A DNA stretch of 64,000 bases, taken from the NCBI GenBank assembly GCA_965285935.1, contig OZ260661.1:93062001-93126000 (forward strand), written 5' to 3'. This stretch comes from Ophelia neglecta. Its lineage: Eukaryota. Shown one piece after another: positions 1-61,839 of this stretch. The translations under genes were made by a program, and so were the position numbers. Position 1 is the stretch's first letter; the number at the start of each line of letters is the position of its first letter. Below the pieces are notes generated by a model that saw only the letters and a program-made list of their open reading frames with translations, ran no database searches and was not told the origin of the DNA.

Positions 1-3000
1 TCTCGCGGAGAGCCCGGACCCGCCGGCCCAACCGGCGAGAGGGGCGAATCTGGTTTACCAGGTCCTTCGGGACCAGCTGGACCCTCGGGACCGGCCGGCT
101 CCCCCGGACAAAGAGGAGAACAAGGACCAAGAGGAGAATCGGGAACTCCAGGACCATCTGGTACGTACATTTAAAGCTGGAATTAGAGATTTGATAGAAT
201 TATTAAACGATACAATATCTTCGGTATTTAATTATTCGCGGCAAATAATGGCGAACACTTTATTATTTCAGGATCTCCCGGTCAACCCGGACCGTCAGGA
301 TCTCGAGGTGAACCAGGACCCGCAGGACCACAAGGTCAAAGGGGTCAATCTGGTGAACGAGGTGAAACAGGACCGGCTGGTCCCTCCGGACCCTCAGGTC
401 CTGCTGGACCCGCTGGTGAAAGGGGAGAACCAGGCCCTGCCGGGTCACAAGGACCAAGCGGATCAAGGGGAGAGCCAGGTCAAGCCGGAGAGGCTGGAAG
501 ACCAGGCCCACAAGGGCAATCTGGATTCCCTGGACCTGCTGGACAAAGAGGCGAGAGCGGGCTTCCTGGCTCACCCGGGCCACAAGGACCAAGAGGTGAA
601 ACAGGTACAGCAGGAAGTGTCGGGGAACAAGGACCGCCAGGTCCCGCTGGATCTAGAGGAGAGTCAGGACCCGCTGGAACACCTGGCTCAAGGGGAGAAA
701 CTGGTCCCCAGGGACCTGCAGGAGAACGTGGAGAGCCCGGACCATCCGGACCCGCAGGTCCCTCTGGGCAAGCTGGACCCTCTGGGCCAGCCGGTCCCAG
801 AGGAGAGGCTGGTCCCCGGGGAGAATCGGGTACGCCAGGATCTTCTGGACAAAGAGGAGAGCCAGGAACAGCTGGTCCACGAGGAGAAGCAGGACCCCAA
901 GGTCCACAGGGCGCAAGAGGCGCTCCCGGTGAACGAGGAGAGTCAGGTACCCCAGGCTCTGCCGGCCAACGAGGAGAATCAGGACCACAGGGTCCAACAG
1001 GCCAATCAGGTCCTTCCGGACCTGCCGGACCCCCTGGACCAAGAGGTGAGACAGGACAAAGAGGTGAAAGCGGACCTCAAGGACCAGCAGGAACTCCAGG
1101 AGAGCGCGGAGAAAGCGGTCTAACAGGACCATCCGGTCCTGCTGGCCCAGCTGGTGAATCCGGAAGGCCAGGAGAACAAGGATCGCCAGGACCTTCAGGT
1201 AGGCTCATCTGTCGATAGTATTCTCTTCTTTGTTTCTTTCAATAGTTAACCTTCATTGACCATATAACATACATAAAATGTTTGGATAACATGGGATAAA
1301 CGCAATTTTGTAGGAGGACCTGGCCCAGCTGGCCCTGCTGGAAGCCGCGGAGAATCTGGCCTACCAGGACCCTCAGGTCCGAGAGGTGAGGCAGGAACTC
1401 CAGGAAGCCCAGGACAGCGAGGAGAACCAGGACCTGCAGGACCTAGTGGCCCAGCAGGAAGTCAAGGACCATCTGGGCCGGCTGGTTCCCCAGGGCCCAG
1501 AGGAGAGCGAGGCGAAACTGGTCCCGCCGGACCTGCAGGTAATTTCATGACCGGTCATTTGCGTACTTTATCTTCCCAATTGTTTATGCATTTGTCATTA
1601 GCTTTGAATCTTAGATAAATTATTGCAGCCTTTTATTGTTTACAAACTGAGGAACGGGTGATGAAATAATAAGAAGACAAATTTCATATTTACGGTAGAT
1701 ATGTCATTTTGCAAAAGCAAAAGTCTAAAAAGTGCCCTTGTCTGTATATTAAAGGAGAGTCAGGATCCCCTGGTCCAGGAGGAGAGAGGGGAGAGCCAGG
1801 ACCAGCAGGACCCAGTGGACCAGCAGGTCCCCGCGGTGAAGCAGGCCCTGCAGGGCCAAGTGGATCAAGAGGCGAGTCCGGACCAGCTGGACCAGCTGGA
1901 CCATCTGGACCTGCCGGTCAACGAGGCGAACCTGGACCCAGAGGAGAAGCTGGACCTCGTGGAGAGTCTGGAACTCCAGGAACACCAGGAGAGAGGGGAG
2001 AACCTGGTCTGTCAGGTCCAACCGGACAGCCAGGCCCATCTGGACCAGCTGGGCCTGCCGGCCCACGCGGTGAATCTGGACCCCGAGGAGAATCTGGCCA
2101 ACCAGGCCCATCAGGGCCGGCTGGACCCGCCGGCCCCGCCGGACCTAGAGGAGAGGTTGGACCACCAGGACCAGCAAGCCAAAGAGGAGAGCCTGGTGCT
2201 AGAGGTCCGCCGGGAGAGGCAGGTACCCCAGGAAGCGCTGGAGAGCGAGGCCCACAAGGTCCTCGAGGACAACCTGGCCCAAGTGGCCCGGCTGGTTCAA
2301 GAGGAGAAGCAGGAACACCAGGCGGACAAGGTCCCAGAGGAGAGGCCGGAACCCCAGGATCCCCAGGTACGTCATTTCACGAAAAAAATTGGACACTAAT
2401 AATGATTGTCAAGTAAGAACTATTTTTCATGTGTTTTGAAGGCCAATTTCTACATACGATTTTTATATGACTGGCAGGATCTGATGGAAGCCCAGGACCT
2501 GCAGGCCCTCGTGGAGAATCAGGAACTCCGGGAGGTGCAGGAGAGACTGGACCAGCTGGACCTTCTGGACCAGCTGGACCTGCTGGACCTCGTGGTGAGC
2601 CCGGAACACGTGGAGAGCGAGGAGAGGTTGGACCTGCTGGGCCTAGCGGACCAGCTGGACCTCGTGGAGAAACCGGACCTGCCGGCCAAAGTGGCCAGCC
2701 AGGACCTCGTGGTGAAACTGGTAAGTCCAGTCATTGGTTATAACGAAATAGACAAGCATTAACCTCCTTTTACACTTTACATAGTGATATGGTGAATGAT
2801 GTAGACGCTTTTGAGTCGGTATTTTAGGAAAACATTTATTTTTATGTTTAAAATTACAAAAGATAGATGTCTTGATATGATTTTGCGTCTATTTACAGGA
2901 TCCCCTGGACCTAGCGGACAATCTGGTCCTAGTGGACCAGCTGGACCATCGGGACCATCTGGGCAACCAGGTCAACCAGGATCAAGAGGAGAACCTGGAC

Positions 3001-6000
3001 CTGCTGGACAGCGAGGAGAAAGAGGCGAAGCTGGCCCTGCAGGCCCATCGGGAGACCCAGGACCGGCCGGTCCCTCTGGACCGAGAGGAGAGACCGGACC
3101 ACAAGGCGGACGAGGAGAACCCGGCTCACGTGGAGAAGCTGGACCTGCTGGACCATCAGGTTCGATCTTTTCTCCGTATTTTATACTTAAAGCGAAACTT
3201 CTTTAAGTATAAAGTATTCTAACTTTGTTTCCACATTTTATTCAATTATTAACTTTGCGTCCACAGGACAACCTGGCCCATCTGGACCAGCGGGTCCTCG
3301 TGGAGAAACTGGTCTCCCTGGAAGTGACGGCCAGCCCGGACCAGCTGGGCCTGCTGGCCCCGCAGGACCACGAGGCGAGGCCGGACCTAGAGGTGAGAGT
3401 GGAGAACCCGGCAGAGCTGGAGAACCAGGAAGAGCCGGTGAACGAGGTGAACGAGGTGAAGCTGGGGAGGCTGGACCGGCAGGACCAGCTGGATCTCCTG
3501 GCCAACGAGGACAACCTGGTGCAAGAGGAGAGTCGGGTCCTTCAGGCCCAGATGGCGGAAATGGACCACCTGGCCCATTGGGTCCAGCTGGACCAAGTGG
3601 CCAACCAGGACCAGCAGGTCCACGCGGAGAACCCGGACCGCGAGGAGAGTCTGGAACACCAGGCTCATCAGGCCCACGTGGGGAAGCAGGACCTTCAGGA
3701 CAATCTGGACCCTCTGGGCCAGCAGGCCCTGCTGGACCCCGTGGAGAAGCAGGACCTCGTGGCGAGCCAGGAGAGAGCGGAACACCTGGAAGCGCCGGGC
3801 CGCGTGGAGAAGCCGGACCCCGAGGAGAGTCGGGACCAGCAGGTCCTTCTGGATCTCCCGGAGAACGCGGATCTCCTGGATCCCCAGGAGAAGCAGGTAG
3901 ACCCGGCCCAGCTGGACCAAGAGGACCACGAGGCGAAACTGGTCTAGGTGGAACACCTGGCGAGAGAGGCCAACCTGGACCAGCAGGATCTGCCGGTAGG
4001 TTTCTTGTCAACGATGTTGCTAATTGATAGTCTCATGTCCGAGGGCACGTCTTTCATGGGATTGCGATCCATTGTAATTTATTAAACCATTAATTATTTC
4101 AGGACCATCGGGACCAGCCGGACCGGCAGGACCCCGTGGAGAATCAGGTTTACCAGGCAGCACTGGTGTCGCAGGGCCAGCAGGTCCAGCGGGACCAACC
4201 GGTCCCAGTGGAGGACCAGGGCAGCGAGGCGAAGCCGGCCCAAGAGGACAACCAGGATCACGTGGAGAGCCAGGGCCAACTGGGCCAGCAGGTTCTCCAG
4301 GACAGCGAGGTGAATCTGGAACTCCTGGATCAGCTGGACAAACTGGACCAGCTGGACAACCAGGACCTTCAGGTCCCGCCGGTCCTTCCGGACCAAGGGG
4401 TGAACCAGGAGCTCGCGGTGAACAAGGTCCTCGCGGAGAGTCAGGAACCCCCGGAACTGATGGCCGTCCAGGAGAGAGAGGAGAGTCCGGACCAGCCGGT
4501 CCATCTGGACCCACTGGCCAACCTGGCCCTCAAGGCCCCGCAGGACCAAGAGGAGAAGCAGGACCAAGAGGAGAGTCCGGTTCTCCAGGCACCCCTGGAT
4601 CAGCTGGACGTGACGGTGAGAATAGGTTTTCAGTTGTTATGTTTTAATTATATAGTTGAATTATGACCAGTGTATCAAAGGAAGCAGGGAGCGTTGACAT
4701 ATTTCATATACAAATTTTCTTACAGGTGAAGCTGGTCAACCTGGCCCAGCAGGGCCTGCTGGCCAATCGGGTCCCGCAGGACCAGCCGGGCCTGCCGGAC
4801 CTCGAGGAGAACGAGGAGAGTCAGGACCTGCCGGACAGCCAGGCCCAGGTGGAGAAAGAGGTCAGCCAGGTTCTCCAGGACCATCAGGTCCCGCAGGCCC
4901 CAGCGGCCCACGAGGTGAATCAGGCCTTCCAGGACCCCAAGGACAGCGAGGTGAACCCGGATCACAAGGACAACGTGGACCAGCCGGTGAACGTGGAGAA
5001 CCTGGCCCCGCTGGAGAAGCCGGCAGAGCAGGAGAACCTGGACCCTCCGGCCCAGCCGGAAGTCAAGGACCTTCAGGACCCGCAGGACCTGCTGGACCAC
5101 GAGGAGAAGCAGGACCGAGGGGAGAATCAGGACCACGAGGAGAGACTGGTCCTGCTGGCTCGCCAGGTACGTTTATATTCAAGATATATAATCATAAGTG
5201 ATTTCATTAGTGTATATTCAGAGATTGTTGCGTATGTGCAATTAAGCAGGCATGACTATTATATTATTATATTAAAGGATCTGATGGGCGACCCGGACCT
5301 CGTGGTGAACGAGGGGAATCAGGTACACCCGGTAGCCAAGGCGAAACAGGACCGGCTGGATCTGCAGGTCCCTCCGGTCCCAGAGGAGAACCTGGACCCC
5401 GCGGGGAAAGCGGAACACCAGGATCGGCTGGAGAAAGAGGAGAAACTGGACCAGCTGGTCCAACTGGACCGCAAGGATCTCGTGGAGAAAGTGGACCAGC
5501 CGGACCATCTGGACAATCTGGACCTGCTGGACCTGCTGGTCCATCTGGACCTCGAGGTGAGCCAGGCTCACGAGGAGAGGCCGGCCCAAGAGGAGAACCA
5601 GGTTCACGAGGTGAACCAGGATCCCAAGGCACTCCAGGTAGAGCAGGCGAGAGGGGAGAGGCTGGCCCACCAGGCGCCAGTGGAGAACCAGGAAGACAAG
5701 GCCCTGCCGGGCCTTCAGGACAGCGAGGAGAACCTGGCCCAAGAGGCGAATCTGGAACTCCTGGAACCCCCGGAAACGATGGATCACCAGGTATATTTAA
5801 CTTATCTTATACACGCCGCATGTGCTCATGGAGTCAATGAATTGAAAATGAGATTTCAGCCATCTTTTAAATTCGGTCATTTTAAAAGGTATGGTAATTA
5901 TTACTGTCACGGGCAGTTATTTATGATAAAGTTCTGCTCCCAGAGAGATCATCTGTGAGGTGTACAATGTGTACCGAGCTTTAAGTCAAAACTGGAATAA

Positions 6001-9000
6001 AACTTAAATAACACTTAAATTCTGGCACTATACATGTGTTGCTTGATTGTTTTTCTGTCAGGCGGAGCTGGACCAGCAGGACCTTCAGGTCCACGAGGCC
6101 AACCAGGACCAGCTGGACCAGCTGGACCCAGAGGAGAAGCTGGACCACGGGGAGAGACCGGACCCGCCGGACCATCAAGTCCACGAGGCGAGAGGGGTGA
6201 GCAGGGTCCACCTGGACCTCCAGGCGAAAGTGGACAACCCGGCCAACCAGGACGCCCTGGCCCAGCAGGAGAAAGAGGACCCTCCGGAGAACCAGGGTCA
6301 CCTGGACCATCTGGTGAAAGAGGTGAACCTGGATTGTCAGGTCCAAATGGTCAGCCCGGTCCATCCGGGCCCCAGGGACCATCTGGTCAAAGAGGAGAGC
6401 CAGGGCCAGCCGGCCCCTCTGGGCCACGGGGAGAAGCCGGGCCTCAGGGAGGTCTAGGTCCACAAGGACCCCAAGGTCCACAGGGATCTCGCGGAGAACC
6501 TGGACCCGCCGGACCATCTGGTCAATCTGGACCTGCAGGACCCGCCGGATCTCCTGGACCAAGAGGCGAGGCAGGACCAAGAGGAGAATCAGGAACCCCT
6601 GGAACCCCCGGACAACGCGGAGAAACTGGTCCAGCAGGCTCACCAGGGCCCTCAGGCCAGAGAGGTGAGGCAGGACCAGCAGGACCTGCCGGTCAGTCAG
6701 GACCTTCTGGACCTGCTGGCCCATCTGGCCCCAGAGGGGAACCCGGACAGAGAGGTGAGCCAGGTAGCAGAGGCGAACCTGGTTCTCGAGGAGAACCAGG
6801 AACCCCTGGATCTGATGGAAGACCTGGCGAGAGAGGACAAGCCGGACCAGCAGGCCCGGCTGGAGAAGCTGGTCGTCAAGGACCTGCTGGACCTGCTGGC
6901 TCCAGAGGAGAACCTGGCCCTAGAGGAGAAGCTGGAACACCAGGCTCCCAGGGCAGCCAAGGAGCTCCAGGTAATATATAGAACATGCAGTTTGTCTGCT
7001 TTTAAAGCATGTCAAACCAGTTTTCCGACATTTTGAGATATGTATTCAGGAATTATTATAACTTGGTCGGTTTAACTTAAAATTTTGAATTGTAAATAAA
7101 ACTCTTTTGCTTTTTACCTCCAGGAGAGGCTGGTCCCGCTGGCAGTCCTGGTCAACGCGGGGAGTCTGGACCAGCCGGCCCCGCCGGACCAGCTGGATCG
7201 CCAGGAGAGCGAGGGGAGACTGGTCCGTCCGGAGCTCCCGGAAGAGATGGCTCCAGAGGACAACCTGGCCCAGCGGGACCTTCTGGTCCCGCCGGGCCTG
7301 CTGGCCCACGAGGAGAGCCCGGCCCAGCAGGATCAACCGGAGAACGAGGAGCACAGGGTCCGGCTGGAAGCCGAGGACAGCCTGGAGAGCGTGGAGAGGC
7401 TGGTACCCCAGGAAATGCTGGACGAGACGGCGCACGTGGTGAGCCTGGACCTGCCGGACCCTCGGGTCCATCAGGGCCTTCCGGACCAGCAGGACCTCGT
7501 GGAGAACCAGGTCAGCGAGGTGAACCCGGCCAAAGAGGAGAAGCTGGTTCAGCTGGAACTCCGGGTAAGCAGTATTTCCAATCTTTCAGGAATAAGTCTT
7601 CTTAATGTTATTTGTATATGAACCTTAACCTTAAAATTCCTCTTTCTAACAATGAACATTGTTCTTTCTAGGATCCGCTGGTCCACAGGGATCACCAGGT
7701 CCGAGAGGTGAACGAGGCGAAGCCGGCCCCTCGGGTGGAGCTGGTCCATCTGGACCACAGGGCCCGAGAGGAGAGTCAGGTACCCCCGGATCTGCCGGAC
7801 CAAGAGGAGAGCCTGGCCAACGTGGTGAGCCTGGAAGAGACGGCACCCCTGGTACTCCAGGATCGCGTGGAGAGGCAGGTCCTCAAGGTCCAACGGGACA
7901 AGCCGGACCTGCAGGGCCCTCCGGACCGGCTGGGTCACGTGGAGAACCTGGACCAGCAGGACCACAAGGCTCTAGAGGCGAGGCTGGCCCTCAGGGACCA
8001 GCAGGATCACCCGGAACAGACGGTATGTACTCGGCAATTCAGTATACAGATCACGATTAAAAGTATTACTATCAGCCGATATCATTAGACAGTAAGAGAG
8101 ACGAAATACAGTGGTTATTAAATTTGTCTTTGAAACAAAATCGAGAAATTTTAGTTCATGCGTGTGCCTTTACAAATCTCCAGGACAACCCGGATCAGCC
8201 GGACCTGCTGGCCCACGAGGTGAACCCGGCCCTGCCGGTGCCGCAGGCCCACGTGGCCAGCCAGGTGAGAGAGGCGAACCCGGTACTGACGGACAACCCG
8301 GACGTGCTGGTGAGCGCGGACAGGCCGGACCCAGCGGCCCAGCCGGACCATCAGGTCCAGCTGGCCCCGCAGGGCCAAGAGGAGAGCCAGGTCAACGTGG
8401 AGAGTCGGGACCTCGTGGAGAACAAGGACCCAGAGGAGAAGGCGGTGAGTGTTAACCAAGGTTTACTTTCCTTACACGGTCCAAATAAGCAATGTAAAAA
8501 AAAAACCACTATTAAAATATGAGGCAATACCATACAAATTTTCCTTTTTGTTAAACAGGATTACCTGGACCAGGTGGCCCAGCAGGCCCAAGAGGCGAAC
8601 CAGGTACACCTGGTTCAGCCGGAGAAACCGGACCTTCCGGGCCAAGTGGACCATCCGGCCCCGCTGGACCTTCAGGTCCACGTGGTGAGCCTGGATCAAG
8701 AGGTGAGGCCGGAGAACCAGGCCCCGCTGGTCCATCAGGACCACGAGGAGAACCAGGATCCCAAGGATCCCCAGGAGAAACAGGTCCTGCCGGTCCATCC
8801 GGACCAGCGGGCCCCAGGGGAACTCCAGGAACCCGAGGAGAACCGGGTCAACGAGGAGAGCCTGGATCAGCTGGACCACAAGGACCACAGGGAGGTAGAG
8901 GCGAACGTGGAGAGGCAGGACCAGCAGGTCCCTCAGGACCACAAGGACCAAGTGGTGCCCCTGGACAACGAGGAGAAGCTGGACCCGACGGACAGCCTGG

Positions 9001-12000
9001 CCGAGATGGTAGCCCTGGTAAGTAGAAATTCAAATACCTGTATATCGATATTATTTATTTTTAAAGTCATTTTCCAACTGCCGATTTTCACACTACTGTT
9101 GTATGTCGACTGCATTTTACTTTTTCTCTCGTTGTCCAGGAGCACAAGGAACTACAGGTCCAGCTGGACCACGTGGTGAGTCGGGCTTGCCAGGACCCCA
9201 AGGATCTCGCGGAGAGCCCGGATCAAGAGGAGAGCCAGGATCAGCTGGACCGGCTGGAGGCCCCGGAGAACGAGGTCAACCAGGATCCGCAGGTCCTTCG
9301 GGCCCTGCAGGACCTGCCGGACCAGCAGGACCACGTGGTACACCTGGACAGCGTGGCGAGGCAGGACCTCGTGGAGAGCCTGGATCAAGAGGCGAACCTG
9401 GTACTGACGGATCTCCTGGATCACCAGGACAACGCGGCGAGCCCGGACCTCAAGGACCATCAGGGCAGGCAGGCCCAGCAGGACCTGCAGGATCCCGAGG
9501 AGAACCTGGACCAGCCGGACCAGCCGGACCGCGAGGACAGGCCGGAACTCCCGGACAACAAGGTAACTTTTTTATTCATAGTCAATATATAAGTTAAATC
9601 AAAGCATACATACGTGAGTATTTATTACAGAGGCCATCCGTTAAGGGAAGGAAATATATAACGTATTATAACGTTGTATTAACGCCCCTAACAATTCCGT
9701 TATATTGTCTTGTGCAGGATCCCAAGGTCCCGCCGGACCTGCCGGACAACGAGGTGAAGCTGGCCCGCAAGGACCATCTGGAGCTCCCGGACAATCAGGC
9801 CCAGCCGGACCACGGGGAGAACCAGGAACAGCAGGTACTCCAGGTCAAAGAGGAGAGCCTGGGCAACGCGGTGAATCAGGTCCAGCAGGACCTGCCGGAT
9901 CCCCAGGACAAAGAGGAGAATCTGGACCAGCCGGTCCAGCAGGACCAGCCGGTCCTGCTGGCTCGAGAGGAGAGCCTGGTGCCCGCGGAGAGGCCGGACC
10001 ACGTGGTGAATCCGGAACACCTGGATCCGCTGGCCCAGCTGGAGAACGAGGCCCAGCAGGACCCCAGGGAGGTGTTGGATCTCCAGGACCCGCTGGACCA
10101 GCAGGCCCTCGAGGAGAAACTGGCTTGCCAGGTGAACCTGGTGTAGGCACACCTGGACAAAGAGGAGAACCCGGAACTCCAGGAACTCCTGGAAGAGCAG
10201 GCGAGAGAGGTCCAGCAGGACCCCAGGGACCACAAGGACCTGCAGGATCTCCCGGCCCCCGAGGAGAATCAGGAACTCCTGGAAGCGCTGGACAAAGAGG
10301 AGAAACTGGACCAGCAGGACAGCCAGGTTCGAAACTTATACCAATATGTCATTATTTCTGTTACAATTTTCTGTATGAACAAGCGATTTTACTAATAATT
10401 ATTAATTCTTCATTTAATAGGAAGTGATGGCCGTCCTGGACCTGCAGGGTCTAGGGGAGAACCAGGCCCATCCGGATCACCTGGAACACCCGGAACACGA
10501 GGAGAACGAGGTGAACGAGGCGAGGCAGGTCCCGCTGGTCCACAGGGACCCGCAGGTACCCCAGGACAACGAGGTGAGCCAGGATCAGCTGGCACCCCAG
10601 GTTCAGCCGGACCTCAAGGAGAACGAGGAGAAGCTGGACCAGCAGGACAGCCAGGGCCTTCAGGACCGTCTGGACCTCAGGGCCCCGCTGGATTACCAGG
10701 AAGCCGAGGAGAAGCAGGACCCGCTGGACCCTCCGGTAAGTTGAGGGCTTCGTTTTCATATAAGTGGTTTAATCTATGAAAGATCAGAAAACAAAACATT
10801 GCCCAACTTAAATTATGAAGATTGTCAGATTCATTACAATGAATTGTTTTCTTGTAGGCGAGCCCGGACCTGCCGGACCAGCTGGCCCGAGAGGCGAGAG
10901 TGGACAACCTGGGCCATCTGGACAGAGAGGACAACCAGGAGAGAGAGGAGAAGCCGGACCTGCAGGCCCACAGGGACCAAGAGGCGAGAGCGGCACTCCA
11001 GGATCCAGTGGCCCGAGAGGGGAGCCCGGATCAGCAGGACCCGCCGGATCCCCAGGACCAGGTGGACCGCGAGGCGAACGTGGAGAGGCAGGGCCTCAGG
11101 GATCTCCTGGAACAAGAGGAGAGCAAGGACCACGAGGAGAAAGCGGCACTCCCGGATCAGCAGGACCAAGAGGTCAACCAGGCTCACCTGGTCCAGCTGG
11201 TCCAGCTGGAGGACGCGGTGAGGTTGGACCTCAAGGACCCGGAGGAGAGCCAGGTCAACGTGGTGAACCAGGATCAGTCGGACAGACAGGTACATGCGTT
11301 GTTATATAACATGCTTAACCCATGATCCTTCATAGAAGGTTAGAATATATATTTATATATATTTGACTATAATTTCTGAGATTCAAGTAGGAGAAACGTT
11401 TAATGGGTGAATCATTTTGCGTTCGAGCGTCTTTCCCCTATAGAATTCAGTACCATTATTTCACCCTATGTTCTTTATGTTAGGACCCCCCGGTGGTCCT
11501 GGTCCACAGGGACAGAGAGGACTTCCATCTCCTGATGGTGCCCCTGGTGAACAAGGTCCCCAAGGTCCAGCAGGACCATCTGGGCAGCCTGGACCAGCCG
11601 GACCACAAGGTGCAAGAGGGGAGGCCGGACCAAGAGGTGAGCCGGGTACGGCTGGCCAAGATGGGCAGCCAGGACAAAGAGGCGAGGCAGGACCTGCAGG
11701 TCCCTCAGGACAGCCAGGACCTGCTGGACCAGCAGGTCCCCAAGGTTCAAGAGGAGAGGCAGGCCCACGAGGTGAAGCAGGTCCTCGAGGAGAATCTGGA
11801 ACACCAGGAACACCGGGTATGTAATGTTAATTGCTTTTCTAAGATAACGAGGTTGAGATGATCATATGTTAACTATGTTCAGATAATCAATCACTGGTTA
11901 TACAGTCCTTAGTGTCTCCCCGAGCAGGTGATATGTTGATTTGACTGGAAATGTAAAACTGACATTTTCTCGATGCAGGTGAACAAGGCAGAGCAGGACC

Positions 12001-15000
12001 TGCTGGACCTTCGGGTCAACCAGGACCTGCCGGCCCTGCTGGAGCAAGAGGCCAGCCTGGAGAACGTGGAGAGGTAGGACCTGCTGGACCTGCTGGAAGT
12101 CGGGGTGAGCCAGGTCCCGCTGGACCATCCGGTCCATCGGGTCAACCAGGCCCATCTGGACAGAGGGGCGAACCAGGGCCCGCCGGCCAACCTGGACCAC
12201 GAGGAGAAGCAGGCACTCCAGGTACACCTGGTACAGCTGGTGAGAGAGGACCTTCAGGACTTCCTGGCCCCTCCGGACCCCAGGGTCAAAGAGGCGAGTC
12301 TGGCACACCTGGCACTCCAGGACAACGTGGAGAGCAAGGCCCAAGAGGAGAGTCTGGAACTCCAGGAACCCCTGGAAGACAGGGCGAACGAGGACAACCA
12401 GGATCTGCCGGTGAAGCTGGACCACAAGGTCCAGCGGGAACACCAGGACAAAGGGGAGAACCTGGCTCTAGAGGAGAGCCTGGTCCAAGAGGAGAATCAG
12501 GAACAGCCGGAACACCTGGTAGTTAACAATTAAATAGACATCATTCAAGGGTGGAATCTTGGGAAAAATTGTAAAAAATTTGACTTTAACTGTACATGAA
12601 CACTCAATAAGGTTGCCATGTGTTTAAATTCTTTCAGGGTCGGCTGGAGAAGCAGGACCTCAAGGACCCAGAGGCGAACCAGGACCAGCAGGCCCTGCCG
12701 GCGCAGCAGGCCCAGCAGGACCTCGGGGAGAACGCGGAGAGTCCGGTCCAGCCGGACCTGCCGGTTCTCGAGGTGAAGCAGGACCGAGGGGTGAATCAGG
12801 TACGCCAGGATCTGCTGGCAGAGCAGGAGAAAGAGGACCCGCGGGACCATCAGGACCTGCAGGACCATCTGGCGGAGCTGGACTTCCTGGCGCACGGGGC
12901 GAACCAGGCCAGAGAGGAGAACCAGGCACAAGAGGTGAGGCTGGACCTGCTGGCCCAGCCGGAGAGCCAGGAAGAGATGGCCAACCTGGACCCTCTGGCC
13001 CAGCCGGTCCCGCTGGACCGAGAGGAGAATCTGGTCCAGCAGGCAGCCCAGGACAACGAGGCGAACCTGGCCCAAGAGGTGAATCCGGAACACCTGGTAC
13101 CCCTGGCAGTCAGGGAGAAAGAGGTGAAGCAGGACCTGCCGGACCTTCAGGCCAAAGGGGACAACCCGGATCCGCTGGACCAAGAGGCGAACCAGGCACC
13201 CCTGGAACTCCAGGTGAAGCAGGAAGGCAAGGAGAGAGAGGCGAGGCTGGACCTGCAGGAGAGCCTGGACGCGCCGGCTCACCTGGTCCATCAGGACCAT
13301 CCGGACCCGCAGGACAACCAGGCCCTCGTGGCGAAACTGGACTACCAGGTCCATCAGGATCAAGAGGCGAGCCCGGTGCCCGAGGAGAACCTGGAACAGA
13401 CGGTAGGCCAGGGGAGAGAGGAACGCCTGGATCAGCAGGTCCATCTGGACCAGCCGGACCAGCAGGCCCAGCTGGCGAACCCGGCTCACGAGGGGAACCT
13501 GGAGAACGAGGACAACCCGGATCAGCTGGTCCCGCAGGTACAGTTTTTACACACATCATGCGATATGTCATGTTTTTAAATTGAAGCTGAAGCAAGAAAA
13601 AATTCACTGGCCATTCAACTATGTATTTGTAAATTGTTTCAGGACCATCTGGACCACAAGGATCCCCTGGTGAACGAGGAGAGCCAGGACCCGCAGGACC
13701 AGCTGGCCCTGCTGGCCCCAGAGGAGAACAAGGACCACGAGGAGAACCAGGAGCACCATCAGCTAGGGGTGAGCGCGGTGAGGCCGGACCTGCTGGACCA
13801 GCTGGACCATCAGGCCCAGCTGGACAACCTGGACCCCCAGGACCAGCTGGAAACGCTGGAAGCAGAGGTCAACCCGGACCAGCCGGTCCCCAAGGAGCTC
13901 GAGGTGAACCAGGGCTTAGCGGGCCTTCCGGCCCAGCTGGACCCGCAGGTCAAAGAGGATCTCCAGGAGAACGAGGAGAACCAGGATCACCTGGGGAGCG
14001 TGGAGAAGCAGGAACTCCCGGATCTAGCGGCCCACGAGGAGAAGCAGGTAATTAGATTAATGTTATAGTGACACCAATCACTTAGGTATATATTGTAAGT
14101 TCTCACACTTACGAACATTTAATTTGTTATAGATTTGAATATACAATGGTGCAATATTGACAGATATTTCACAGAGCAAAGTAATGGACAATACATTGTA
14201 TTAATTGTTTAAACTATTTAAATAAAGGACCCGACGGGCAACCAGGACCAAGCGGACCACGTGGTGAACCAGGATCCCAAGGACCATCGGGATCACCCGG
14301 ACCGGCGGGACCTTCCGGCCCAAGAGGAGAGCCAGGTCCTCGTGGAGAGTCAGGCTCTCCAGGACCACAAGGTTCACGTGGCGAGTCAGGCCCAGCTGGA
14401 CAAGCAGGTACACCAGGCGAAAGAGGAGAGGCAGGCCCAGCTGGTCCTCAGGGACCCTCGGGCAGATCTGGACCAGCAGGCCCAGCAGGACCAAGCGGAG
14501 AACCAGGATCACGAGGAGAACCAGGCCCACGTGGAGAATCAGGAACTCCAGGACAGGCCGGTCGACAAGGTGAAAGAGGAGAACCAGGTACTGCAGGCTC
14601 TCCCGGACCCGCAGGACCAGCAGGACCTAGAGGCGAGGCTGGACCACGCGGAGAATCCGGCCCAAGAGGAGAGCCAGGACCCAGAGGAGAATCAGGTATT
14701 TGATGTTGATTATCTAGATACAACTTTATGTCTGTAGCGCTCGTCACAACTTTAGTCGCACTCATCAGTATTTTTACGTAACCATCCCATTTTCTATTAA
14801 TAGGCACCCCCGGAACACCAGGATCTGCCGGATCAAGAGGAGAAGCAGGACCAGCTGGCCCCTCTGGCGGTGCTGGACCCGCAGGACCCGCCGGCCCAAG
14901 AGGAGAGGCTGGCCCAGCAGGATCAAGGGGAGAACCTGGCCCACGAGGTGAGACAGGTGAAGCTGGAACCCCAGGAAGTGCCGGACAAGCTGGGCCCCCT

Positions 15001-24000: not shown

Positions 24001-27000
24001 AGGCCCTGCAGGGCCCACGGGAGAAACCGGACCAGCAGGATCACCTGGCGAACCTGGACCTTCCGGCCCACGTGGAGAAGCCGGCCCAGCTGGACCTTCA
24101 GGACAGAGAGGCGAGCCCGGGTCACCTGGGCCGCGTGGAGAGGCAGGACCAGCAGGTCCTTCAGGACCCCTTGGACAATCAGGACCACCAGGTCCAATTG
24201 GTGAATCAGGTCCTCGTGGACAACCAGGATCGAGAGGAGAAACTGGACCAGCTGGAGAACCAGGTTCGTAAAATATACTATATATTTTATAATATATAAA
24301 ATAATGAGATAATTGAAATAAATTGTTGCAGAATAATTTTATATGATCACGCTATTGTAGCATGGTATGAAGCAAATTCTATGTTTTATTTTATTATAGG
24401 TCCGGCGGGACCAAGTGGCCCATCTGGACCAAGAGGTGAATCTGGACCACAGGGACCAAGCGGTCCTTCTGGAACACCTGGCACACGAGGAGAGATTGGA
24501 CCACCAGGACCAAGCGGACAGCGCGGAGAAAGAGGACCAGCAGGAGAGGCTGGACCACAGGGTCCATCTGGATTAGCCGGACCACGTGGCGAGGCAGGGC
24601 CTTCCGGACCTTCAGGTCCTTCAGGTCCTTCAGGAGAACCTGGATCACCTGGACCTCGCGGCGAGCCAGGTCCATCAGGACAGACCGGACAACCTGGCCC
24701 TGCAGGTCAACCTGGCCCACGAGGAGAACCAGGGTCAAGAGGAGAATCTGGACAACGTGGACAATCTGGACCACCTGGACCAAGAGGTGAATCTGGCCCA
24801 CAAGGACAATCTGGCCCACCAGGGCCCTCGGGACCTTTGGGACCATCAGGACCTCGAGGAGAACCTGGACCAGCCGGACCAGGATTACCAGGACCTGCAG
24901 GTCCACGAGGAGAGTCTGGACCTCCTGGCCCAATAGGTTCGTACTTGCACCTGCTTTTTTTGTATATTTCAGAGGTTTGTTCTTGTATAAGGTATTTTTT
25001 CTCATATTGAAATGTAAACCCGATTTGTACAGTTAATAAATGGCCTTAAACATAATTTTTCTTAATTCTCACACAGGTCCATCAGGCCCATCTGGCCCAT
25101 CCGGACCACGAGGTGAATCTGGACCACCGGGTCCAGCTGGACAACCAGGACCTCTAGGACCATCAGGACAAAGAGGAGAACCAGGAAACAGAGGACAGTC
25201 AGGTCAACGTGGAGAAGCTGGTCCTCCTGGAGAATCCGGCTTGCCAGGACCAAGTGGTCCAAGAGGCGAGTCTGGACCACCAGGAACACAAGGAAACCAA
25301 GGACCTCCCGGACCACTCGGAGAAGCCGGCCCTGCTGGCCCCATCGGACAACGAGGTGGGCCTGGTCCAAGTGGACCACGAGGAGAAAGTGGCCCAAGCG
25401 GACCACCTGGCCAGAGTGGACCCCGAGGCAACGCTGGTGAACGAGGATCACCTGGAGAAGCCGGACCAGCAGGCCCAGCTGGACCACGTGGTAATCCAGG
25501 TTCTATTGGAACCCGAGGAGAAAGAGGACCACCAGGATCAATGGGACAGTCTGGTCCCCCAGGACCATCAGGCCCGCTCGGACCTGCTGGACCACCCGGC
25601 CCACGAGGTGAATCAGGTGGCTTGGGAGAACCGGGTCCTGCTGGACCCCCTGGCCCACTTGGCCGACCTGGTCCACAAGGACCATCTGGTCCATCTGGTC
25701 CCAGAGGAGAACCAGGACCGAGCGGACCATCTGGACAGGCTGGATTCCAAGGACCACGAGGTGAACCTGGAGAATCTGGACCACCAGGGCCGAGAGGAGA
25801 GAGTGGACCACTTGGTCCATCTGGCCCACCCGGAACAAGAGGAGAATCCGGACCACGAGGTGAACCTGGTTTACCAGGTCCCAACGGCCCAGCGGGAGGA
25901 ACAGGACCAAGCGGTCCCCCCGGACCATTAGGAGGACCTGGCCCATTGGGTCCACGAGGTCCATCAGGAGAAAGAGGCCCACAGGGTCCGAGCGGCCCAA
26001 GAGGAGAACCAGGACCTCCCGGACCATCAGGACAGTCAGGTAACCAAGGTCCTCCAGGACCACTAGGACCAATAGGACCACCAGGTCCACTTGGCGAAAG
26101 AGGAAACGCAGGGCCACCAGGGTCACAGGGTGAATCTGGTGACCCCGGAACTCAAGGACCTGCTGGTCCACCAGGACCGAGAGGGCCAAGCGGAGAACGA
26201 GGACCAGCTGGCGGAGTTGGTCCACCAGGAACCAGAGGAGAGTCAGGTCCACCTGGACGACCTGGGTCCACAGGAGCACCAGGTCCACTGGGAGGTAGAG
26301 GGCCACGCGGACCTATTGGACCATCTGGTCCTCTAGGAAGAACTGGAGAAAGAGGTGGACCAGGCGAGTCCGGACCAGCGGGATCACCTGGCTCCAACGG
26401 CCCACCCGGCCCCAGTGGACAGAGGGGACAACCGGGACCACCAGGAACAAGAGGTACAGCTATTTCAAAGTATAAACGTGTCGTTTAATGCCATTACAAT
26501 TATCAATAATTTCGAAGAAATTCTGGCTTAGTAACAAGTGGGAAAGAATCGTAACATAGGGACCCTGTATAACATTAGTTAAACCTGTATTTATAATGTA
26601 TATAAACAACTCGTGTTTGCATTGTGTAGGAGGTGACGGCTTGCCAGGAGGACCCGGACCTAATGGCAGACCAGGAGCGACTGGATGGACAGGTGCCCGA
26701 GGAGGAACCGGCTCTTCCGGATTCCCCGGACCATCTGGTCAGCGAGGTTTAGCCGGACCATCTGGTCCTCCAGGAGAGCAAGGTTTGCCTGGAGAAGATG
26801 GTCGCCGTGGAACCAACGGCCAACCCGGCGCAAGCGGACGCCCAGGTAAACACGGAAAATCTGATTTCTCCGAAGTAGAATAGGTTTTAATTGCAATGTC
26901 TGGTAATATTATGAGTAACAAGAACAGTATCATAATCTAAATTGATTCCCTACGGTAAAAATAATAAAATGGCAAGTAAGATTGATAACAATGACTTTGC

Positions 27001-28418
27001 AGGAGCTACTGGGTGGACTGGCCGACCAGGACCGAGTGGAAGCCCTGGACGCACCGGTGGTACTGGACTCACTGGCCCTACTGGCCGCACCGGATCTACA
27101 GGTAATCAATCAGTCTGTGTTTATAATTGATGCAGGTAATTTATAAATAGAATTAAAGATGCAGCTAAGTTGTGTAAGGTCAAATCCGCATAGACAAAGA
27201 ATTTTCATTAACTAAAGCTATGCTTAAAAATATTATTACCTTGTTCATGGTGCATCATTTATTTGCTGTCAATCCGTAGGTGGCACCGGTTTCGCTGGTC
27301 CTAGAGGTCCTCCAGGTCTGAGAGGCGAAAGTGGTCAACCAGGCCGACCAGGCCGTGACGGAGCTTCCGGAGCTACAGGCCCAACAGGTAGAGTACAGCC
27401 AGATGTTCTGATAGCGGGATACGAGCAAAGACAGACGTTGTTAAAGTTGCCTAGTCTAAACTTTTATCTCGTGGAATGATATCCCTTAAAAGGATCCATT
27501 AATTTTTAAATATCCAGGAATTTTTAACAGATTTAAAATATTATTGGCCAAAAAATGTCACTAGATTAGCCTCCGGTTTGAATTTTGTTCGATAACTGTT
27601 GTATTATTTGTTGTGTAGGCCGTACTGGAGCCACCGGAGCCACAGGTCTTGCTGGACGTTTGGGAGCCACTGGATACACTGGCCAGACCGGAGCCACAGG
27701 TTTCACTGGTCAAGCAGGACGACCAGGAGCCGGCTTCCTCGGTAAGACTTTCATATCTATTTCATGTCTCATTCGTTGGAGGAAAGTTTCATAAAGTCAG
27801 GATTGTGTTTGGAGTCACACTAATATTCACTAATGAACAAGAATAAGTAAAGTTCTAAGAATGTTTTGACAAGTTGCCTACCGCCTTTTCCTTTCAGCAA
27901 TGAACAGTAAAATGAACGAAGATGAGCAAGTTGAAAATAAAATCGCCGGCAAGTTAGGCGCGGCCTCCAATACACTGGGCACGACGACGATTGCGCTCGC
28001 CGCCTGGGCCGGTGTGGTGACCATGGCGCTCGCCGGTATGGTGGTGCTAGTCTTCAGGCGAATCCGTCGCGGTGGGGTTACCTGGTCCTCAAAGACCGAC
28101 GCCGAGTCGGGTGTGTCCAGTGAGACCTCCTCCGAGAAGTCCTCCGTCATAGACCTCAATGACGCCCAGTCAATTGCCCAGATGGGCTTCGCCAATGGCG
28201 GTTTGGACGCCGATTTCGAGGAGGAGAATGTGCAGCACGAGGAGGTGGATTTCGACACCGTTGACGGGCTGTACGATGACAACACGTCCGACGTGGCAGA
28301 CGTACACACCGAGGGCAAGCAGCCGCCATCTTTTAGTCGGGCCATCACCAAGAGCAAAAACAGCAACTCGCAAAACCTGCGTGGACTATTTTTACCAGAC
28401 TCGGGCTCATCCTTTTAG
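1..28418 (+). CDS. Giant Gly-X-Y collagen with C-terminal transmembrane anchor (5'-partial; 43 exons, about 7,204 aa in window)
   Basis: Exons bounded by GT/AG, read manually: <1-160, 272-1198, 1314-1538, 1755-2366, 2478-2720, 2899-3159, 3267-3995, 4103-4615, 4726-5166, 5278-5790, 6062-6970, 7124-7564, 7672-8022, 8184-8444, 8559-9017, 9140-9562, 9718-10326, 10421-10735, 10858-11289, 11484-11816, 11979-12518, 12638-13537, 13643-14047, 14228-14695, 14804-15388, 15496-16098, 16382-16840, 17186-17905, 17994-18587, 18700-19293, 19384-19842, 20038-20811, 21141-21590, 21965-22675, 22867-23478, 23661-24263, 24400-24936, 25077-26453, 26630-26845, 27003-27101, 27280-27387, 27619-27741, 27898-28418(stop). 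Sum 21,615 nt. All introns are phase 1, all internal exons are multiples of 3 (38 of 41 multiples of 9), and GC-rich exons alternate with short AT-rich introns. Confidence 0.92.
27990..28070 (+). other. Transmembrane helix plus stop-transfer basic cluster of the collagen (type I topology)
   Basis: [22 protein letters not shown] (22 uncharged, mostly hydrophobic residues) followed directly by RRIRR. The last exon joins in frame through a phase-1 splice (G|CA = Ala, then MNSK...). Confidence 0.85.
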
Positions 28419-61400: not shown

Positions 61401-61839
61401 CGTTGATATACATGAGGTATTCGACCTAAACTGGTGGCTAAACGGACTACCAGATCAGACGCCAAGAAAACAGTCAAATACTTCAACGACTGTGATAAAT
61501 TAAAACACTATGACTATATCCAAATAGTCTCACTATCTTATGAATTATACAAACATATAATGCATTATACAATCGCCTATAAATAGTATTTAAAGATGCA
61601 TCATACTAATAATCAACGCTTGTAAATGATGAGGGAATATCCCTGTAGTTTTTAGCAGATTCATTCGCACCTATTCTGTTGAGTCCGTGACTGTAATGTC
61701 CCCGGTAATCAGCGTCTAACAGGTTCTCAGCAAACACGTCTGCCTCCTCCTCGGTAGCGCCAACCGCCATGATACAGCGTCTGTGAAATGACCTCACTTC
61801 CGGTATAGAAATCACCGGCCAATTCTTCTTGTCGTCCAT
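52448..61839 (-). CDS. Ldh_2 family oxidoreductase, paralog 2, 362 aa, 12 exons
   Basis: Exons (minus strand): 61839-61671, 60497-60390, 59743-59663, 59259-59198, 58940-58887, 58704-58606, 58455-58390, 57880-57811, 54726-54608, 53220-53125, 52830-52723, 52504-52448. Same exon lengths, phases and motifs as paralog 1; no stop or frameshift seen. Confidence 0.92.
55102..57766 (+). mobile_element. Long-TIR DNA transposon, copy B, in intron 8 of paralog 2
   Basis: TIRs 55102-55623 and 57245-57766, termini CACGGGGG...CCCCCGTG, flanked by CACAT on both sides. Empty site present in paralog 1 near 32631 (CAAGTCACATAAT). Confidence 0.92.
55970..56820 (+). pseudogene. Decayed transposase-like ORF fragment inside copy B
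   Basis: The 203-aa ORF continues in frame past stops as [38 protein letters not shown] hydrophobic strand ending in Asp resembles the first catalytic Asp of an RNase H-fold transposase. A homologous fragment lies on the minus strand in copy A (about 48875-49300). Confidence 0.55.
59377..59578. repeat. Compound (GA/GACA)n microsatellite in intron 3 of paralog 2
   Basis: AGAGAGACAGAGAGGGACAGAGACAG...AGACAGACAG. A short version sits at about 39859-39894 in paralog 1. Confidence 0.85.
60273..60382. repeat. Same 22-bp minisatellite, 5 units, in intron 2 of paralog 2
   Basis: Same consensus and same position relative to the exon 2 donor. Confidence 0.9.

What the first reader, a model, noticed from the sequence alone, without database searches (positions are those of the whole stretch)
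1..28418. A single gene encoding a collagen triple helix of at least 7,000 residues (about 2 micrometres): candidate gene for the giant annelid-type cuticle collagen
Seen: 42 collagenous exons splice into one frame of about 7,030 Gly-X-Y residues (about 2,340 triplets), and the gene is still open at base 1. Established: the fibrillar collagen helix is about 1,014 residues (300 nm), with a rise near 0.29 nm per residue, so this helix is at least about 2 micrometres and each chain over about 0.6 MDa. The only collagen molecules I know at this scale are annelid cuticle collagens (vestimentiferan, alvinellid, nereid; roughly 1.5-2.4 micrometres by rotary shadowing), which I know mainly from biochemistry rather than full gene models. 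Inference: this is such a gene, and it is likely fragmented or missed by automated annotation.
Basis: partly seen in the sequence, partly recalled or inferred. Interest (0 to 1): 0.93.

Follow-up and report, generated by a model that had tools for sequence, protein, structure and literature searches.

The report
Giant membrane-anchored annelid collagen gene
The window holds most of one intact 39-kb worm gene for a 9,251-residue collagen chain whose roughly 2.5-micrometre rod fits the giant cuticle collagens of annelids. The chain is predicted to be tethered to the cell membrane by its far end, which I found described for no other collagen.

Summary
Window 1-27741 (+) carries 42 collagenous exons encoding 7,031 Gly-X-Y residues, and the gene runs on upstream.

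The full model has 63 coding exons over 39,080 bases and encodes 9,251 residues:
- a signal peptide and two VWA domains;
- one 8,640-residue helix (2,874 triplets, 7 tiny interruptions, about 2.47 micrometres);
- a 30-residue linker, one transmembrane helix and a conserved acidic 120-residue tail.

Of 62 introns, 61 are phase 1. No internal DNA repeat of 200 bases or more exceeds 75% identity. Exon lengths are conserved in two other species. Intron-free contigs from relatives join the helix to the membrane tail at my predicted splice site.

An inverted paralogue lies about 36 kb upstream. Its helix has 8,619 residues, and four of its interruptions match in place and type, so the two may be chains of one heterotrimer.

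The genome carries the annelid erythrocruorin-linker domain. [quoted passage not shown]

Size alone is not new: PMC12403961 (2025) lists annelid collagens of 7,719-8,859 residues. That paper mentions neither the membrane anchor nor the VWA heads. This scan had already noted such C-terminally anchored collagens, and this gene pair, on other DNA of this genome. Cuticle location and expression remain untested.

The parts
1..27741 (+). Coding exons 21 (its last 160 bases) to 62 of 63: 42 collagenous exons encoding 7,031 Gly-X-Y residues. The gene continues upstream of base 1. Upstream parts: start codon at L003:9339 (window -10661); exon 1 with the signal peptide L003:9339-9450; VWA1 in L003:9648-9945 plus L002:300-583; VWA2 in L002:1833-2441; first collagen exon from L002:2696.
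   Evidence: (exon table). All introns in the window are phase 1 with GT-AG ends. 53 of 56 internal collagen exons are multiples of 9 nt; the other three each hold a 2-residue interruption.
6178..6186 (+). Helix interruption Ser-Pro-Arg (glycine replaced), helix residue 3192. The paralogue gene A has Asn-Glu-Arg at its helix residue 3195.
10149..10154 (+). Two-residue helix interruption Thr-Pro, helix residue 4245. Gene A has Ser-Gln at 4248.
13759..13767 (+). Helix interruption Ser-Ala-Arg, helix residue 5183. Gene A has Ser-Asp-Arg at 5186.
24885..24890 (+). Two-residue helix interruption Leu-Pro, helix residue 7985. Gene A has Asp-Ile at 7979. The orthologue L012 has a break at the same spot (54 triplets, 2 residues, 6 triplets). 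L014 has one within one triplet of it (53, 2, 7).
27003..27741 (+). Exons 60-62: threonine-rich end of the helix (Gly-Ala-Thr and Gly-X-Thr cluster) ending in Gly-Phe-Leu, conserved in gene A and in relatives.
27898..27989 (+). Start of the last exon (phase 1, completes an Ala codon): acidic juxtamembrane linker of 30 residues with no furin-type site.
   Evidence: Relatives' intron-free contigs show the same Gly-Phe-Leu-Ala-Met junction.
27990..28055 (+). Transmembrane helix of 22 hydrophobic residues, with an invariant Trp, followed by Arg-Arg-Ile-Arg-Arg (positive-inside stop-transfer).
   Evidence: it holds the highest 19-residue hydropathy window of the whole protein, 2.25.
28056..28418 (+). 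Cytoplasmic tail of 120 residues including the Arg-Arg-Ile-Arg-Arg stop-transfer; the 114 residues after it hold 22 Asp/Glu, 7 Lys/Arg and 26 Ser/Thr. Motifs shared across the relatives aligned: Ser-Asp-Ala-Glu-Ser-Gly (Thr-Asp-Ala-Glu-Ser-Gly here), Ser-Ser-Val-Ile/Val-Asp-Leu, Asp-Phe..Gly-Leu-Tyr-Asp-Asp, and the end Gly-Leu-Phe-Leu-Pro-Asp-x-Gly-Ser-Ser-Phe. Stop codon at 28416-28418.
   Evidence: No Pfam family matched.

Best explanation
One intact 63-coding-exon gene (window -10661 to 28418, + strand) encodes a 9,251-residue type I membrane protein. It has a cleavable signal peptide, two MIDAS-bearing VWA domains, a single 8,640-residue collagen helix (about 2.47 micrometres), a 30-residue linker, one transmembrane helix and a conserved acidic cytoplasmic tail.

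I read it as one chain of the 2.5-micrometre-class cuticle collagen of an annelid. Its likely partner is the inverted paralogue about 36 kb upstream.

Inferred mechanism:
1. The three chains are held together in the ER membrane by their C-terminal anchors.
2. The conserved Gly-Ala-Thr cluster next to the membrane nucleates the helix, which zips towards the N-terminus. Anchor plus cluster thus do the job of the missing C-propeptide.
3. The conserved tail directs the molecule to the apical face of the epidermal cell.
4. There the rod is either released by cutting in the linker or stays as a tether.
5. The VWA heads, related to collagen-binding integrin I domains, bind neighbouring rods.

Shown here: gene structure, domains, conservation, and the helix-to-anchor junction in relatives' transcript-like contigs. 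Inferred: trimer composition, folding direction, shedding, cuticle location.
For: Gene structure:
- The 27,756-nt reading frame has no internal stop. Of 62 introns, 61 are phase 1; median intron length is 142 nt.
- Pfam finds VWA twice and Collagen. Cysteines occur only as two pairs flanking the VWA domains.
- The strongest hydrophobic window of the protein is the C-terminal helix, followed by Arg-Arg-Ile-Arg-Arg.

Not an assembly artefact:
- The longest exact internal repeat is 29 nt. No self-match of 200 nt or more exceeds 75% identity.

Conservation:
- In orthologue L012, 11 exons of identical length align without gaps over 1,905 codons. Identity by codon position is 0.72 / 0.86 / 0.43.
- A third species, L014, keeps the same block lengths.

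Transcript-like evidence from relatives:
- Five intron-free Logan contigs from five runs (L015-L019) and one JGI contig (L013) read straight from the helix through the same junction into the membrane helix and tail.
- Full-length transcripts of 7,719-8,689 residues are published for Paralvinella species.

Fit to cuticle collagen:
- Helix length is 2.47 micrometres.
- The commonest triplets are Gly-Pro-Ala (437), Gly-Pro-Ser (328) and Gly-Pro-Arg (251). The helix has no Lys, His or Cys.
- Glycyl-hydroxyprolyl-serine is a sequence of earthworm cuticle collagen (title). 4-Hyp at the X position is unusually high in earthworm cuticle collagen.
- There is no long-range residue periodicity. This fits the unstriated earthworm cuticle fibrils (abstract).
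- The genome has the annelid erythrocruorin-linker domain.

Partner chain:
- Gene A has 8,619 helix residues, four interruptions matching in place and type, and shared runs of exon lengths.

VWA2 is closest to collagen VI alpha-3 VWA domains and to the collagen-binding integrin alpha-2 and alpha-1 I domains.
Against: - There is no RNA, protein or tissue evidence from this organism.
- Exons 1-4 (signal peptide and VWA domains) are joined to the helix only by splice phase, proximity and the parallel layout of gene A. No relative's transcript covers that end, and the VWA2 search found nothing.
- A membrane anchor is unexpected for a collagen that, as I recall, can be extracted as free 2.5-micrometre molecules. 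No furin-type site lies outside the membrane, so release is unproven.
- The same genome holds other giant C-terminally anchored collagens, one of them threonine-rich like the Riftia cuticle collagen (notes, not tested by me). These compete for the cuticle role.
- The trimerisation test gave no answer.
- Published lengths (2.5 and 1.5 micrometres) and the two-chain make-up of Nereis collagen are from my memory; I could not read those papers.
Confidence: 0.6

Rival explanations
1. The gene is real and giant, but its product is not the bulk cuticle fibre. It stays anchored in the membrane as a tether or spacer, for example tying epidermal cells or their microvilli to the cuticle, or serving another tissue's matrix.
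For: - The transmembrane helix and a 120-residue tail with motifs shared across relatives, ending in a possible PDZ-type ligand, argue for a lasting cellular function of the anchor.
- No furin-type site lies in the linker.
- Other giant anchored collagens in the genome could supply the fibre.
Against: - Helix length, X-position proline with Ala or Ser at Y, the absence of Lys and the single globular end all fit the extracted cuticle collagen.
- A paired gene of equal length suggests an abundant structural heterotrimer.
Confidence: 0.25
2. The region holds several shorter collagen genes, or is an assembly artefact of a repetitive collagen array.
For: - There is no RNA from this organism.
- Collagen repeats can mislead assemblers, a caution also voiced in PMC12403961.
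Against: - All 57 introns between the 58 collagen exons are phase 1 with GT-AG ends and unbroken Gly register. There are no internal stops and no internal start or terminal exons.
- The DNA is unique: self-identity is at most 75% and the longest exact repeat is 29 nt.
- The same exon lengths occur in the same order in two other species and in the paralogue.
- Relatives have single transcripts of this size.
Confidence: 0.03
3. It is an unexpressed or decaying duplicate, with gene A or another paralogue being the working gene.
For: There is no expression evidence.
Against: - A 27.8-kb frame with no stop or frameshift is intact.
- Third codon positions are saturated (0.43 identity) while second positions are kept (0.86) against an orthologue, with not one indel in 1,905 codons.
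- The tail motifs are conserved.
Confidence: 0.03

Closest known systems
Giant annelid cuticle collagens (Nereis, Lumbricus, Arenicola, Alvinella; Riftia is shorter), and the 7,719-8,859-residue annelid collagen predictions in PMC12403961
   Same: - A very long, nearly uninterrupted helix with a globular end.
- Size class: 9,251 against 7,719-8,859 residues.
- Proline use: Gly-Pro-Y 44% and Gly-X-Pro 22.5% here, against 33-40% and 21-33% there; the earthworm Eisenia andrei (40% and 21.5%) is nearest.
- Gly-Pro-Ser and Gly-Pro-Ala are abundant.
   Different: - Neither the review nor the genome paper mentions a membrane anchor or VWA domains.
- Location in the cuticle is not shown here.
- The Riftia type is threonine-rich and shorter. 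This helix is only 3.4% Thr, apart from its two ends.
Membrane-associated collagens: MACITs (XIII, XXIII, XXV, C. elegans COL-99) and collagen XVII
   Same: Single-pass membrane proteins with a collagenous ectodomain. Helix nucleation next to the membrane is the accepted idea for them.
   Different: - They are type II proteins, with an N-terminal cytosolic domain and signal anchor (abstract of PMC4678570). This protein has an N-terminal signal peptide and a C-terminal anchor.
- From my own knowledge, their helices are interrupted and more than ten times shorter, and they carry furin sites. This one has no such site outside the membrane.
VWA-bearing collagens (VI, XII, XIV, XXII, XXVIII) and integrin alpha-1 / alpha-2 I domains
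   Same: N-terminal VWA domains with an intact Asp-x-Ser-x-Ser MIDAS motif. The best solved relatives are collagen VI alpha-3 and the integrin alpha-2 I domain.
   Different: No FN3, TSPN or C-terminal VWA was seen. Helix length and the membrane anchor have no counterpart in those collagens.
Head-to-head COL4A1/COL4A2-type collagen gene pairs
   Same: Two paralogous chains are encoded on opposite strands, start to start. Their helices are nearly equal in length and their interruptions match.
   Different: The starts lie about 36 kb apart, not around one short shared promoter. There is no NC1 domain. Co-assembly is inferred, not shown.
Fibrillar collagens
   Same: A long, continuous Gly-X-Y helix.
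   Different: - No C-propeptide: no Pfam hit in the last exon.
- Introns split the glycine codon (phase 1), rather than exons beginning with a complete glycine codon as in fibrillar collagen genes (the latter from my own knowledge).
- No Lys for lysyl-oxidase cross-links, and no D-period-like periodicity.

Membership tests
Annelid giant cuticle collagen (biochemically defined) | Triple helix of about 2.5 micrometres (1.5 in vestimentiferans) | tested here: met
   8,640 helix residues x 0.286 nm = 2.47 micrometres. The published lengths are from my memory of Gaill et al.; the review says only 'very long triple helix'.
Annelid giant cuticle collagen (biochemically defined) | Globular domain at an end of the rod | tested here: met
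   Two VWA domains (about 400 residues per chain) directly precede the helix. The review cites globular domains.
Annelid giant cuticle collagen (biochemically defined) | Imino acid at the X position followed by Ala or Ser (Gly-Hyp-Ala, Gly-Hyp-Ser); high X-position 4-Hyp | tested here: met
   Pro fills 44% of X positions. [quoted passage not shown] Literature basis. Hydroxylation itself cannot be read from DNA.
Annelid giant cuticle collagen (biochemically defined) | Organism is an annelid | tested here: met
   PF16915 (annelid erythrocruorin linker C-terminus) matches over the curated cut-off at two places on contig C9, with none in 14 control genomes. This is a single marker; the species is not identified.
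Annelid giant cuticle collagen (biochemically defined) | Protein present in the cuticle; made by the epidermis | not testable with these tools
Annelid giant cuticle collagen (biochemically defined) | Two distinct chains (reported for Nereis; from my memory) | tested here: inconclusive
   A paralogue with a near-equal helix and four co-placed interruptions lies head to head. Co-assembly is not shown.
Giant annelid collagens of PMC12403961 | Chain of about 7,700-8,900 residues with Gly-Pro-Y 33-40% and Gly-X-Pro 21-33% | tested here: met
   9,251 residues, 44.2% and 22.5% against Table 1 of the paper. X-position proline is slightly above their range.
Giant annelid collagens of PMC12403961 | Sequence orthology to APscaff0012.353.p1 or GWHPACBE014886 | not tested
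Type II membrane collagens (MACIT, XVII) | N-terminal cytosolic domain and signal-anchor (type II topology) | tested here: not met
   The N-terminal hydrophobic stretch looks like a signal peptide. The only strong membrane helix is C-terminal, with basic residues on its C-side.
Type II membrane collagens (MACIT, XVII) | Furin-type shedding site in the ectodomain | tested here: not met
   The only Arg-x-Lys/Arg-Arg match is the cytoplasmic stop-transfer sequence.
Fibrillar collagens | C-propeptide (COLFI) and exons that begin with a complete glycine codon | tested here: not met
   No Pfam family in the last exon. 61 of 62 introns are phase 1 and split the glycine codon.

The most novel reading that the evidence does not exclude
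The 2.5-micrometre annelid cuticle collagen is built as a type I membrane protein, a heterotrimer of two chains encoded head to head. A transmembrane anchor and a membrane-proximal Gly-Ala-Thr cluster replace the C-propeptide as the device that registers and nucleates a helix of about 8,600 residues. The conserved cytoplasmic tail lets the epidermal cell place each molecule before it is released into the orthogonal fibre lattice. That would be a collagen assembly route described for no other collagen that I know of.
Probability: 0.3. Interest if true: 0.85.

Novelty: new variant of a known kind. Interest (0 to 1): 0.62.

Why it matters
Annelid cuticle collagens have been known since the 1960s-1990s as the longest collagen molecules. 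Their genes were named only as long predictions in 2025, without domain analysis.

This locus gives a complete, checkable model. It has a VWA head, a helix of the right length and chemistry, a partner gene with matching helix breaks, and a membrane anchor in the opposite orientation to every membrane collagen I know of.

That makes three old questions directly testable:
- How can three chains of about 8,600 residues find their register without a C-propeptide?
- How does an epithelium lay down an ordered, unbanded fibre lattice?
- What are the two subunits?

It also gives annotators a template for genes that automatic pipelines break into dozens of pieces.

Tried and rejected
- RNA evidence from this organism: the look-up of sequencing runs listed only three runs of one study, none on record as RNA. 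Two local scripts on the closed machine did read the whole gene region, this intron included: a self-comparison and a comparison with L012.
- Searches were made exon by exon by reference. The joined frame was used only inside scripts for counting.
- Complex prediction on three copies of the linker plus membrane helix returned 'no answer' (score 0.07). It is not evidence either way.
- The search for homologous proteins with the VWA2 exon found nothing at E <= 1e-10, so the VWA-to-helix junction has no outside support.
- The look-up of encoding contigs with the LINE ORF2, tried to name the organism, found nothing.
- A paper search for the accessions GCA_029979725, JARPNT, SRR26183954 and ERZ25069296 found nothing. 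The listing of cluster members gave no names.
- The supplements of PMC8233474 are not held, and the old JCB papers are held only as abstracts. I therefore could not compare against a published amino-acid table.
- Long-range periodicity was rejected. No residue class exceeds the 99% shuffle bound in either gene. Exon junctions show no period: the best is 66 triplets, with a Rayleigh value of 4.45 against a null median of 4.15.
- The tail of gene B was not detected in gene A. Gene A has its own membrane helix but a different tail.
Full report
**1. Observation**

The + strand of window 7-27734 carries 47 uninterrupted Gly-X-Y runs totalling 2,367 triplets. The minus strand has 6 short runs totalling 37 triplets. 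The runs merge into 42 blocks.

Each pair of neighbouring blocks is joined by a canonical splice pair of the form G|GT...AG|GN. This splits a glycine codon after its first base and keeps both the reading frame and the Gly register. The one junction my script missed was resolved by eye: donor at 11290, acceptor at 11483, again phase 1.

The 42 collagen exons that overlap the window encode 21,094 nt = 7,031 residues = 2,344 triplets. G+C is 53-61% over the gene and 36-43% in the flanks. The window contains no N.

**2. The whole gene**

The window is G000:C1:93062001-93126000. I fetched upstream DNA.

- The collagen exons continue for 7.3 kb upstream of base 1.
- Ahead of them lie a VWA exon (L002:1833-2441), a VWA domain split over two exons (L003:9648-9945 and L002:300-583), and a first coding exon (L003:9339-9450). 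That first exon has a charged start, a 14-residue hydrophobic core and a small-residue cleavage region.
- Pfam confirms VWA in all three pieces and Collagen in the helix exon tested. It finds nothing in the last exon.
- Both VWA domains keep the Asp-x-Ser-x-Ser MIDAS motif. The protein's only four cysteines flank the two domains in pairs.

Assembled in a script, the model has these properties:

| Property | Value |
|---|---|
| Coding exons | 63 |
| Span | 39,080 bases |
| Coding sequence | 27,756 nt, no internal stop |
| Protein | 9,251 residues, about 836 kDa unmodified |
| Introns | 62 (61 phase 1, 1 phase 2), median 142 nt |
| Helix | residues 437-9076: 8,640 residues, 2,874 triplets |
| Helix interruptions | 7, each of two or three residues |
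| Predicted rod length | about 2.47 micrometres |

A probable non-coding leader exon lies just upstream and contains a hairpin. That hairpin is the subject of other notes of this scan.

**3. The C-terminal end**

Exon 62 ends in Gly-Phe-Leu. The last exon (27898-28418) is again phase 1. It encodes an acidic 30-residue linker, then 22 hydrophobic residues followed by Arg-Arg-Ile-Arg-Arg, then an acidic Ser/Thr-rich tail (120 residues counting that basic run), then a stop.

This hydrophobic stretch holds the strongest hydropathy window in the protein: 2.25, against 1.46 for the signal peptide. With an N-terminal signal peptide and basic residues on the C-side, the predicted topology is type I.

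The ectodomain has no furin-type site. There is no C-propeptide or NC1 domain.

**4. Is it real, and is it one gene?**

- *Uniqueness.* The DNA is not a recent repeat array. The longest exact repeat is 29 nt. No self-match of 200 nt or more exceeds 75% identity. Assembly collapse or expansion is therefore unlikely.
- *Relatives of the last exon.* A search of 1.84 billion representative proteins found 31 relatives, all short ORF calls of 125-252 residues from Logan, ENA, NCBI and JGI records without names.
- *Orthologue L012.* The best relative (63% identical) lies on a 73.7-kb ENA contig, L012, and is preceded by collagen exons. Eleven of its exons have exactly the lengths of window exons 49-51, 53, 54 and 56-61. 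They align without gaps or stops over 1,905 codons. Identity at codon positions 1, 2 and 3 is 0.72, 0.86 and 0.43. Exon length and protein sequence have been kept while synonymous sites are saturated.
- *Third species L014.* A contig of NCBI assembly GCA_029979725.1 shows the same block lengths, with one intron lost.
- *Transcript-like contigs.* Five Logan contigs from five runs (L015-L019) hold one open frame of up to 618 codons. It runs from a Thr-rich helix through '...Gly-Phe-Leu-Ala-Met...' into the membrane helix and tail, with no intron. The 3.7-kb JGI contig L013 does the same after 330 triplets. In my gene the same stretch is split by four introns, so these contigs look like spliced mRNA. 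They confirm, in relatives, the exact junction I predicted.
- *Published transcripts.* PMC12403961 reports assembled transcripts encoding 7,719-8,689-residue collagens in three Paralvinella species, and an 8,859-residue prediction in Alvinella.

No RNA from this organism could be examined.

**5. The conserved tail**

I aligned 18 tails. The Trp in the membrane helix, an Arg after it and an Asp in the tail are invariant. Shared motifs include:
- Val-Phe-Arg-Arg-Leu-Arg after the membrane helix;
- Ser-Asp-Ala-Glu-Ser-Gly;
- Ser-Ser-Val-Val-Asp-Leu;
- Asp-Phe..Gly-Leu-Tyr-Glu/Asp-Asp;
- the C-terminal end Gly-Leu-Phe-x-Pro-Asp-x-Gly-Ser-Ser-Phe, with or without one more hydrophobic residue.

In both end variants a Ser sits two places before a hydrophobic last residue. 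That is the pattern of a class I PDZ ligand; this reading is my inference. A tail kept this well implies cytoplasmic partners.

In this genome the tail matches only itself and one distant locus on C8.

**6. The partner gene**

Following a lead from earlier notes, I found a paralogue on the minus strand, gene A, between about -49,800 and -91,500. It has one VWA exon with a degenerate MIDAS motif, 67 collagen blocks mostly with phase-1 introns, and a last exon with its own membrane helix and a different tail. After hand-curating five junctions, I compared it with gene B:

| Feature | Gene B (this finding) | Gene A |
|---|---|---|
| Helix residues | 8,640 | 8,619 |
| Triplets | 2,874 | 2,866 |
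| Interruptions | 7 | 11 |

Four interruptions agree in place and type (helix numbering):

| Gene B | Gene A |
|---|---|
| 3192 Ser-Pro-Arg | 3195 Asn-Glu-Arg |
| 4245 Thr-Pro | 4248 Ser-Gln |
| 5183 Ser-Ala-Arg | 5186 Ser-Asp-Arg |
| 7985 Leu-Pro | 7979 Asp-Ile |

The last of these is also present in L012, and within one triplet in L014.

Runs of exon lengths recur in the same order in both genes: 441-351-261-459; 540-900; 459-720-594; 459-774-450. The pair is therefore an old inverted duplication of the whole gene. Near-equal helix length and co-placed breaks are what chains of one heterotrimer need. Co-assembly remains an inference. In gene A the donor after its last collagen exon is uncertain by six bases.

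**7. What it is**

- *Organism.* The genome matches Pfam PF16915, the annelid erythrocruorin linker C-terminus, over the curated cut-off. The organism is therefore very probably an annelid. The species was not identified.
- *Helix chemistry.* Per 1,000 helix residues: Gly 340, Pro 222, Ser 96, Ala 88, Arg 76, Glu 76, Gln 47, Thr 34, and no Lys, His or Cys. The X position is 44% Pro and 23% Glu. The Y position is 24% Ala, 22.5% Pro, 20.5% Arg and 18.5% Ser. The commonest triplets are Gly-Pro-Ala, Gly-Pro-Ser and Gly-Pro-Arg.
- *Literature fit.* Earthworm cuticle collagen contains glycyl-hydroxyprolyl-serine (Goldstein and Adams 1970, title seen). It has unusually high 4-Hyp at the X position (PMC8233474). 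[quoted passage not shown]
- *Proline use.* It is closest to the earthworm entry in Table 1 of PMC12403961.
- *No periodicity.* I found no long-range residue periodicity. That fits the unstriated cuticle fibrils noted for earthworms (abstract).
- *From memory only.* The 2.5-micrometre length for Alvinella, Arenicola and Nereis, 1.5 micrometres for Riftia, and two distinct Nereis chains.

**8. How it most likely works**

Shown: the domain order, the topology signals and their conservation.

Inferred:
1. The C-terminal anchors hold three chains side by side in the ER membrane.
2. The Gly-Ala-Thr cluster next to the membrane, conserved in genes A and B and in every relative seen, nucleates the helix. 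It may be O-glycosylated, as in the Riftia collagen named.
3. The helix then zips towards the N-terminus.
4. The tail sorts or holds the molecule at the apical surface.
5. The rod is then cut free in the linker or remains as a tether.
6. The VWA heads are closest to collagen VI VWA domains and to the collagen-binding integrin alpha-2 and alpha-1 I domains. They may bind Glu-containing triplets of neighbouring rods; Glu fills 23% of X positions.

The one structural test I ran on trimerisation gave no answer.

**9. Novelty**

A giant annelid collagen gene is no longer new after PMC12403961. That paper contains none of the words transmembrane, von Willebrand or VWA. My paper searches found no collagen with a C-terminal anchor; MACITs are type II. 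The architecture, the conserved tail and the co-registered gene pair therefore appear undescribed in the literature I could search.

Within this scan they are not new. Earlier notes on other DNA of this genome describe C-terminally anchored giant collagens, and notes upstream of this window describe this head-to-head pair. One of those collagens is threonine-rich, and its authors matched it to the Riftia cuticle collagen. Which of these collagens builds the cuticle here is open.

**10. Limits**

- There is no expression or protein evidence from this organism.
- The N-terminal exons are joined by phase and position only.
Local scripts did read them.

Noticed in passing
window 33805-39044 (+): An intact-looking LINE-type retrotransposon. 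ORF1 has 574 residues and no Pfam hit. ORF2 has 1,170 residues with endonuclease and reverse-transcriptase domains. It appears to sit inside an intron of the minus-strand Ldh_2 gene.
   Followed up: partly
window 31897-32130, 45156-45386, 59637-59921 and 61606-61839 (-): Exons of two tandem genes of the Malate/L-lactate dehydrogenase type 2 family (Pfam PF02615). Their first coding exons are almost identical, differing at 2 of 77 residues (45153-45386 and 61606-61839).
   Followed up: partly
L003:9020-9160 (window about -10980 to -10840): A probable non-coding leader exon of the collagen gene, with a GC-rich hairpin. The fold energy is -37.8 kcal/mol, but only z = -1.46 against shuffles. A donor at about L003:9160 and an acceptor just before the start codon suggest a 64th, untranslated exon.
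   Followed up: partly
G000:C1 about 92,970,500-93,012,200 (window -91,500 to -49,800), minus strand; loci L006-L011: Paralogue gene A: one VWA exon with a degenerate MIDAS motif (Asp-Ala-Gly-Glu-Asp), an 8,619-residue helix with 11 interruptions, its own membrane helix, and a tail unrelated to that of gene B.
   Followed up: partly
window exon table, all collagen exons: Another note on this window (s1-734196) proposes a 64-triplet period in exon architecture. Across the whole gene the exon junctions show no significant period: the best is 66 triplets, with a Rayleigh value of 4.45 against a null median of 4.15 and a 95% bound of 6.9.
   Followed up: partly
L012:12945-20519 (-): In the related species the gene downstream of the collagen orthologue is a myosin heavy chain (Pfam marks), not the Ldh_2 genes seen here. 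Downstream synteny is therefore not kept.
   Followed up: no
G000:C8:46005790-46006074 (-): The only other place in this genome that matches the gene B membrane helix and tail (34% identity, E = 3.8e-5). It may be the last exon of a further family member.
   Followed up: no
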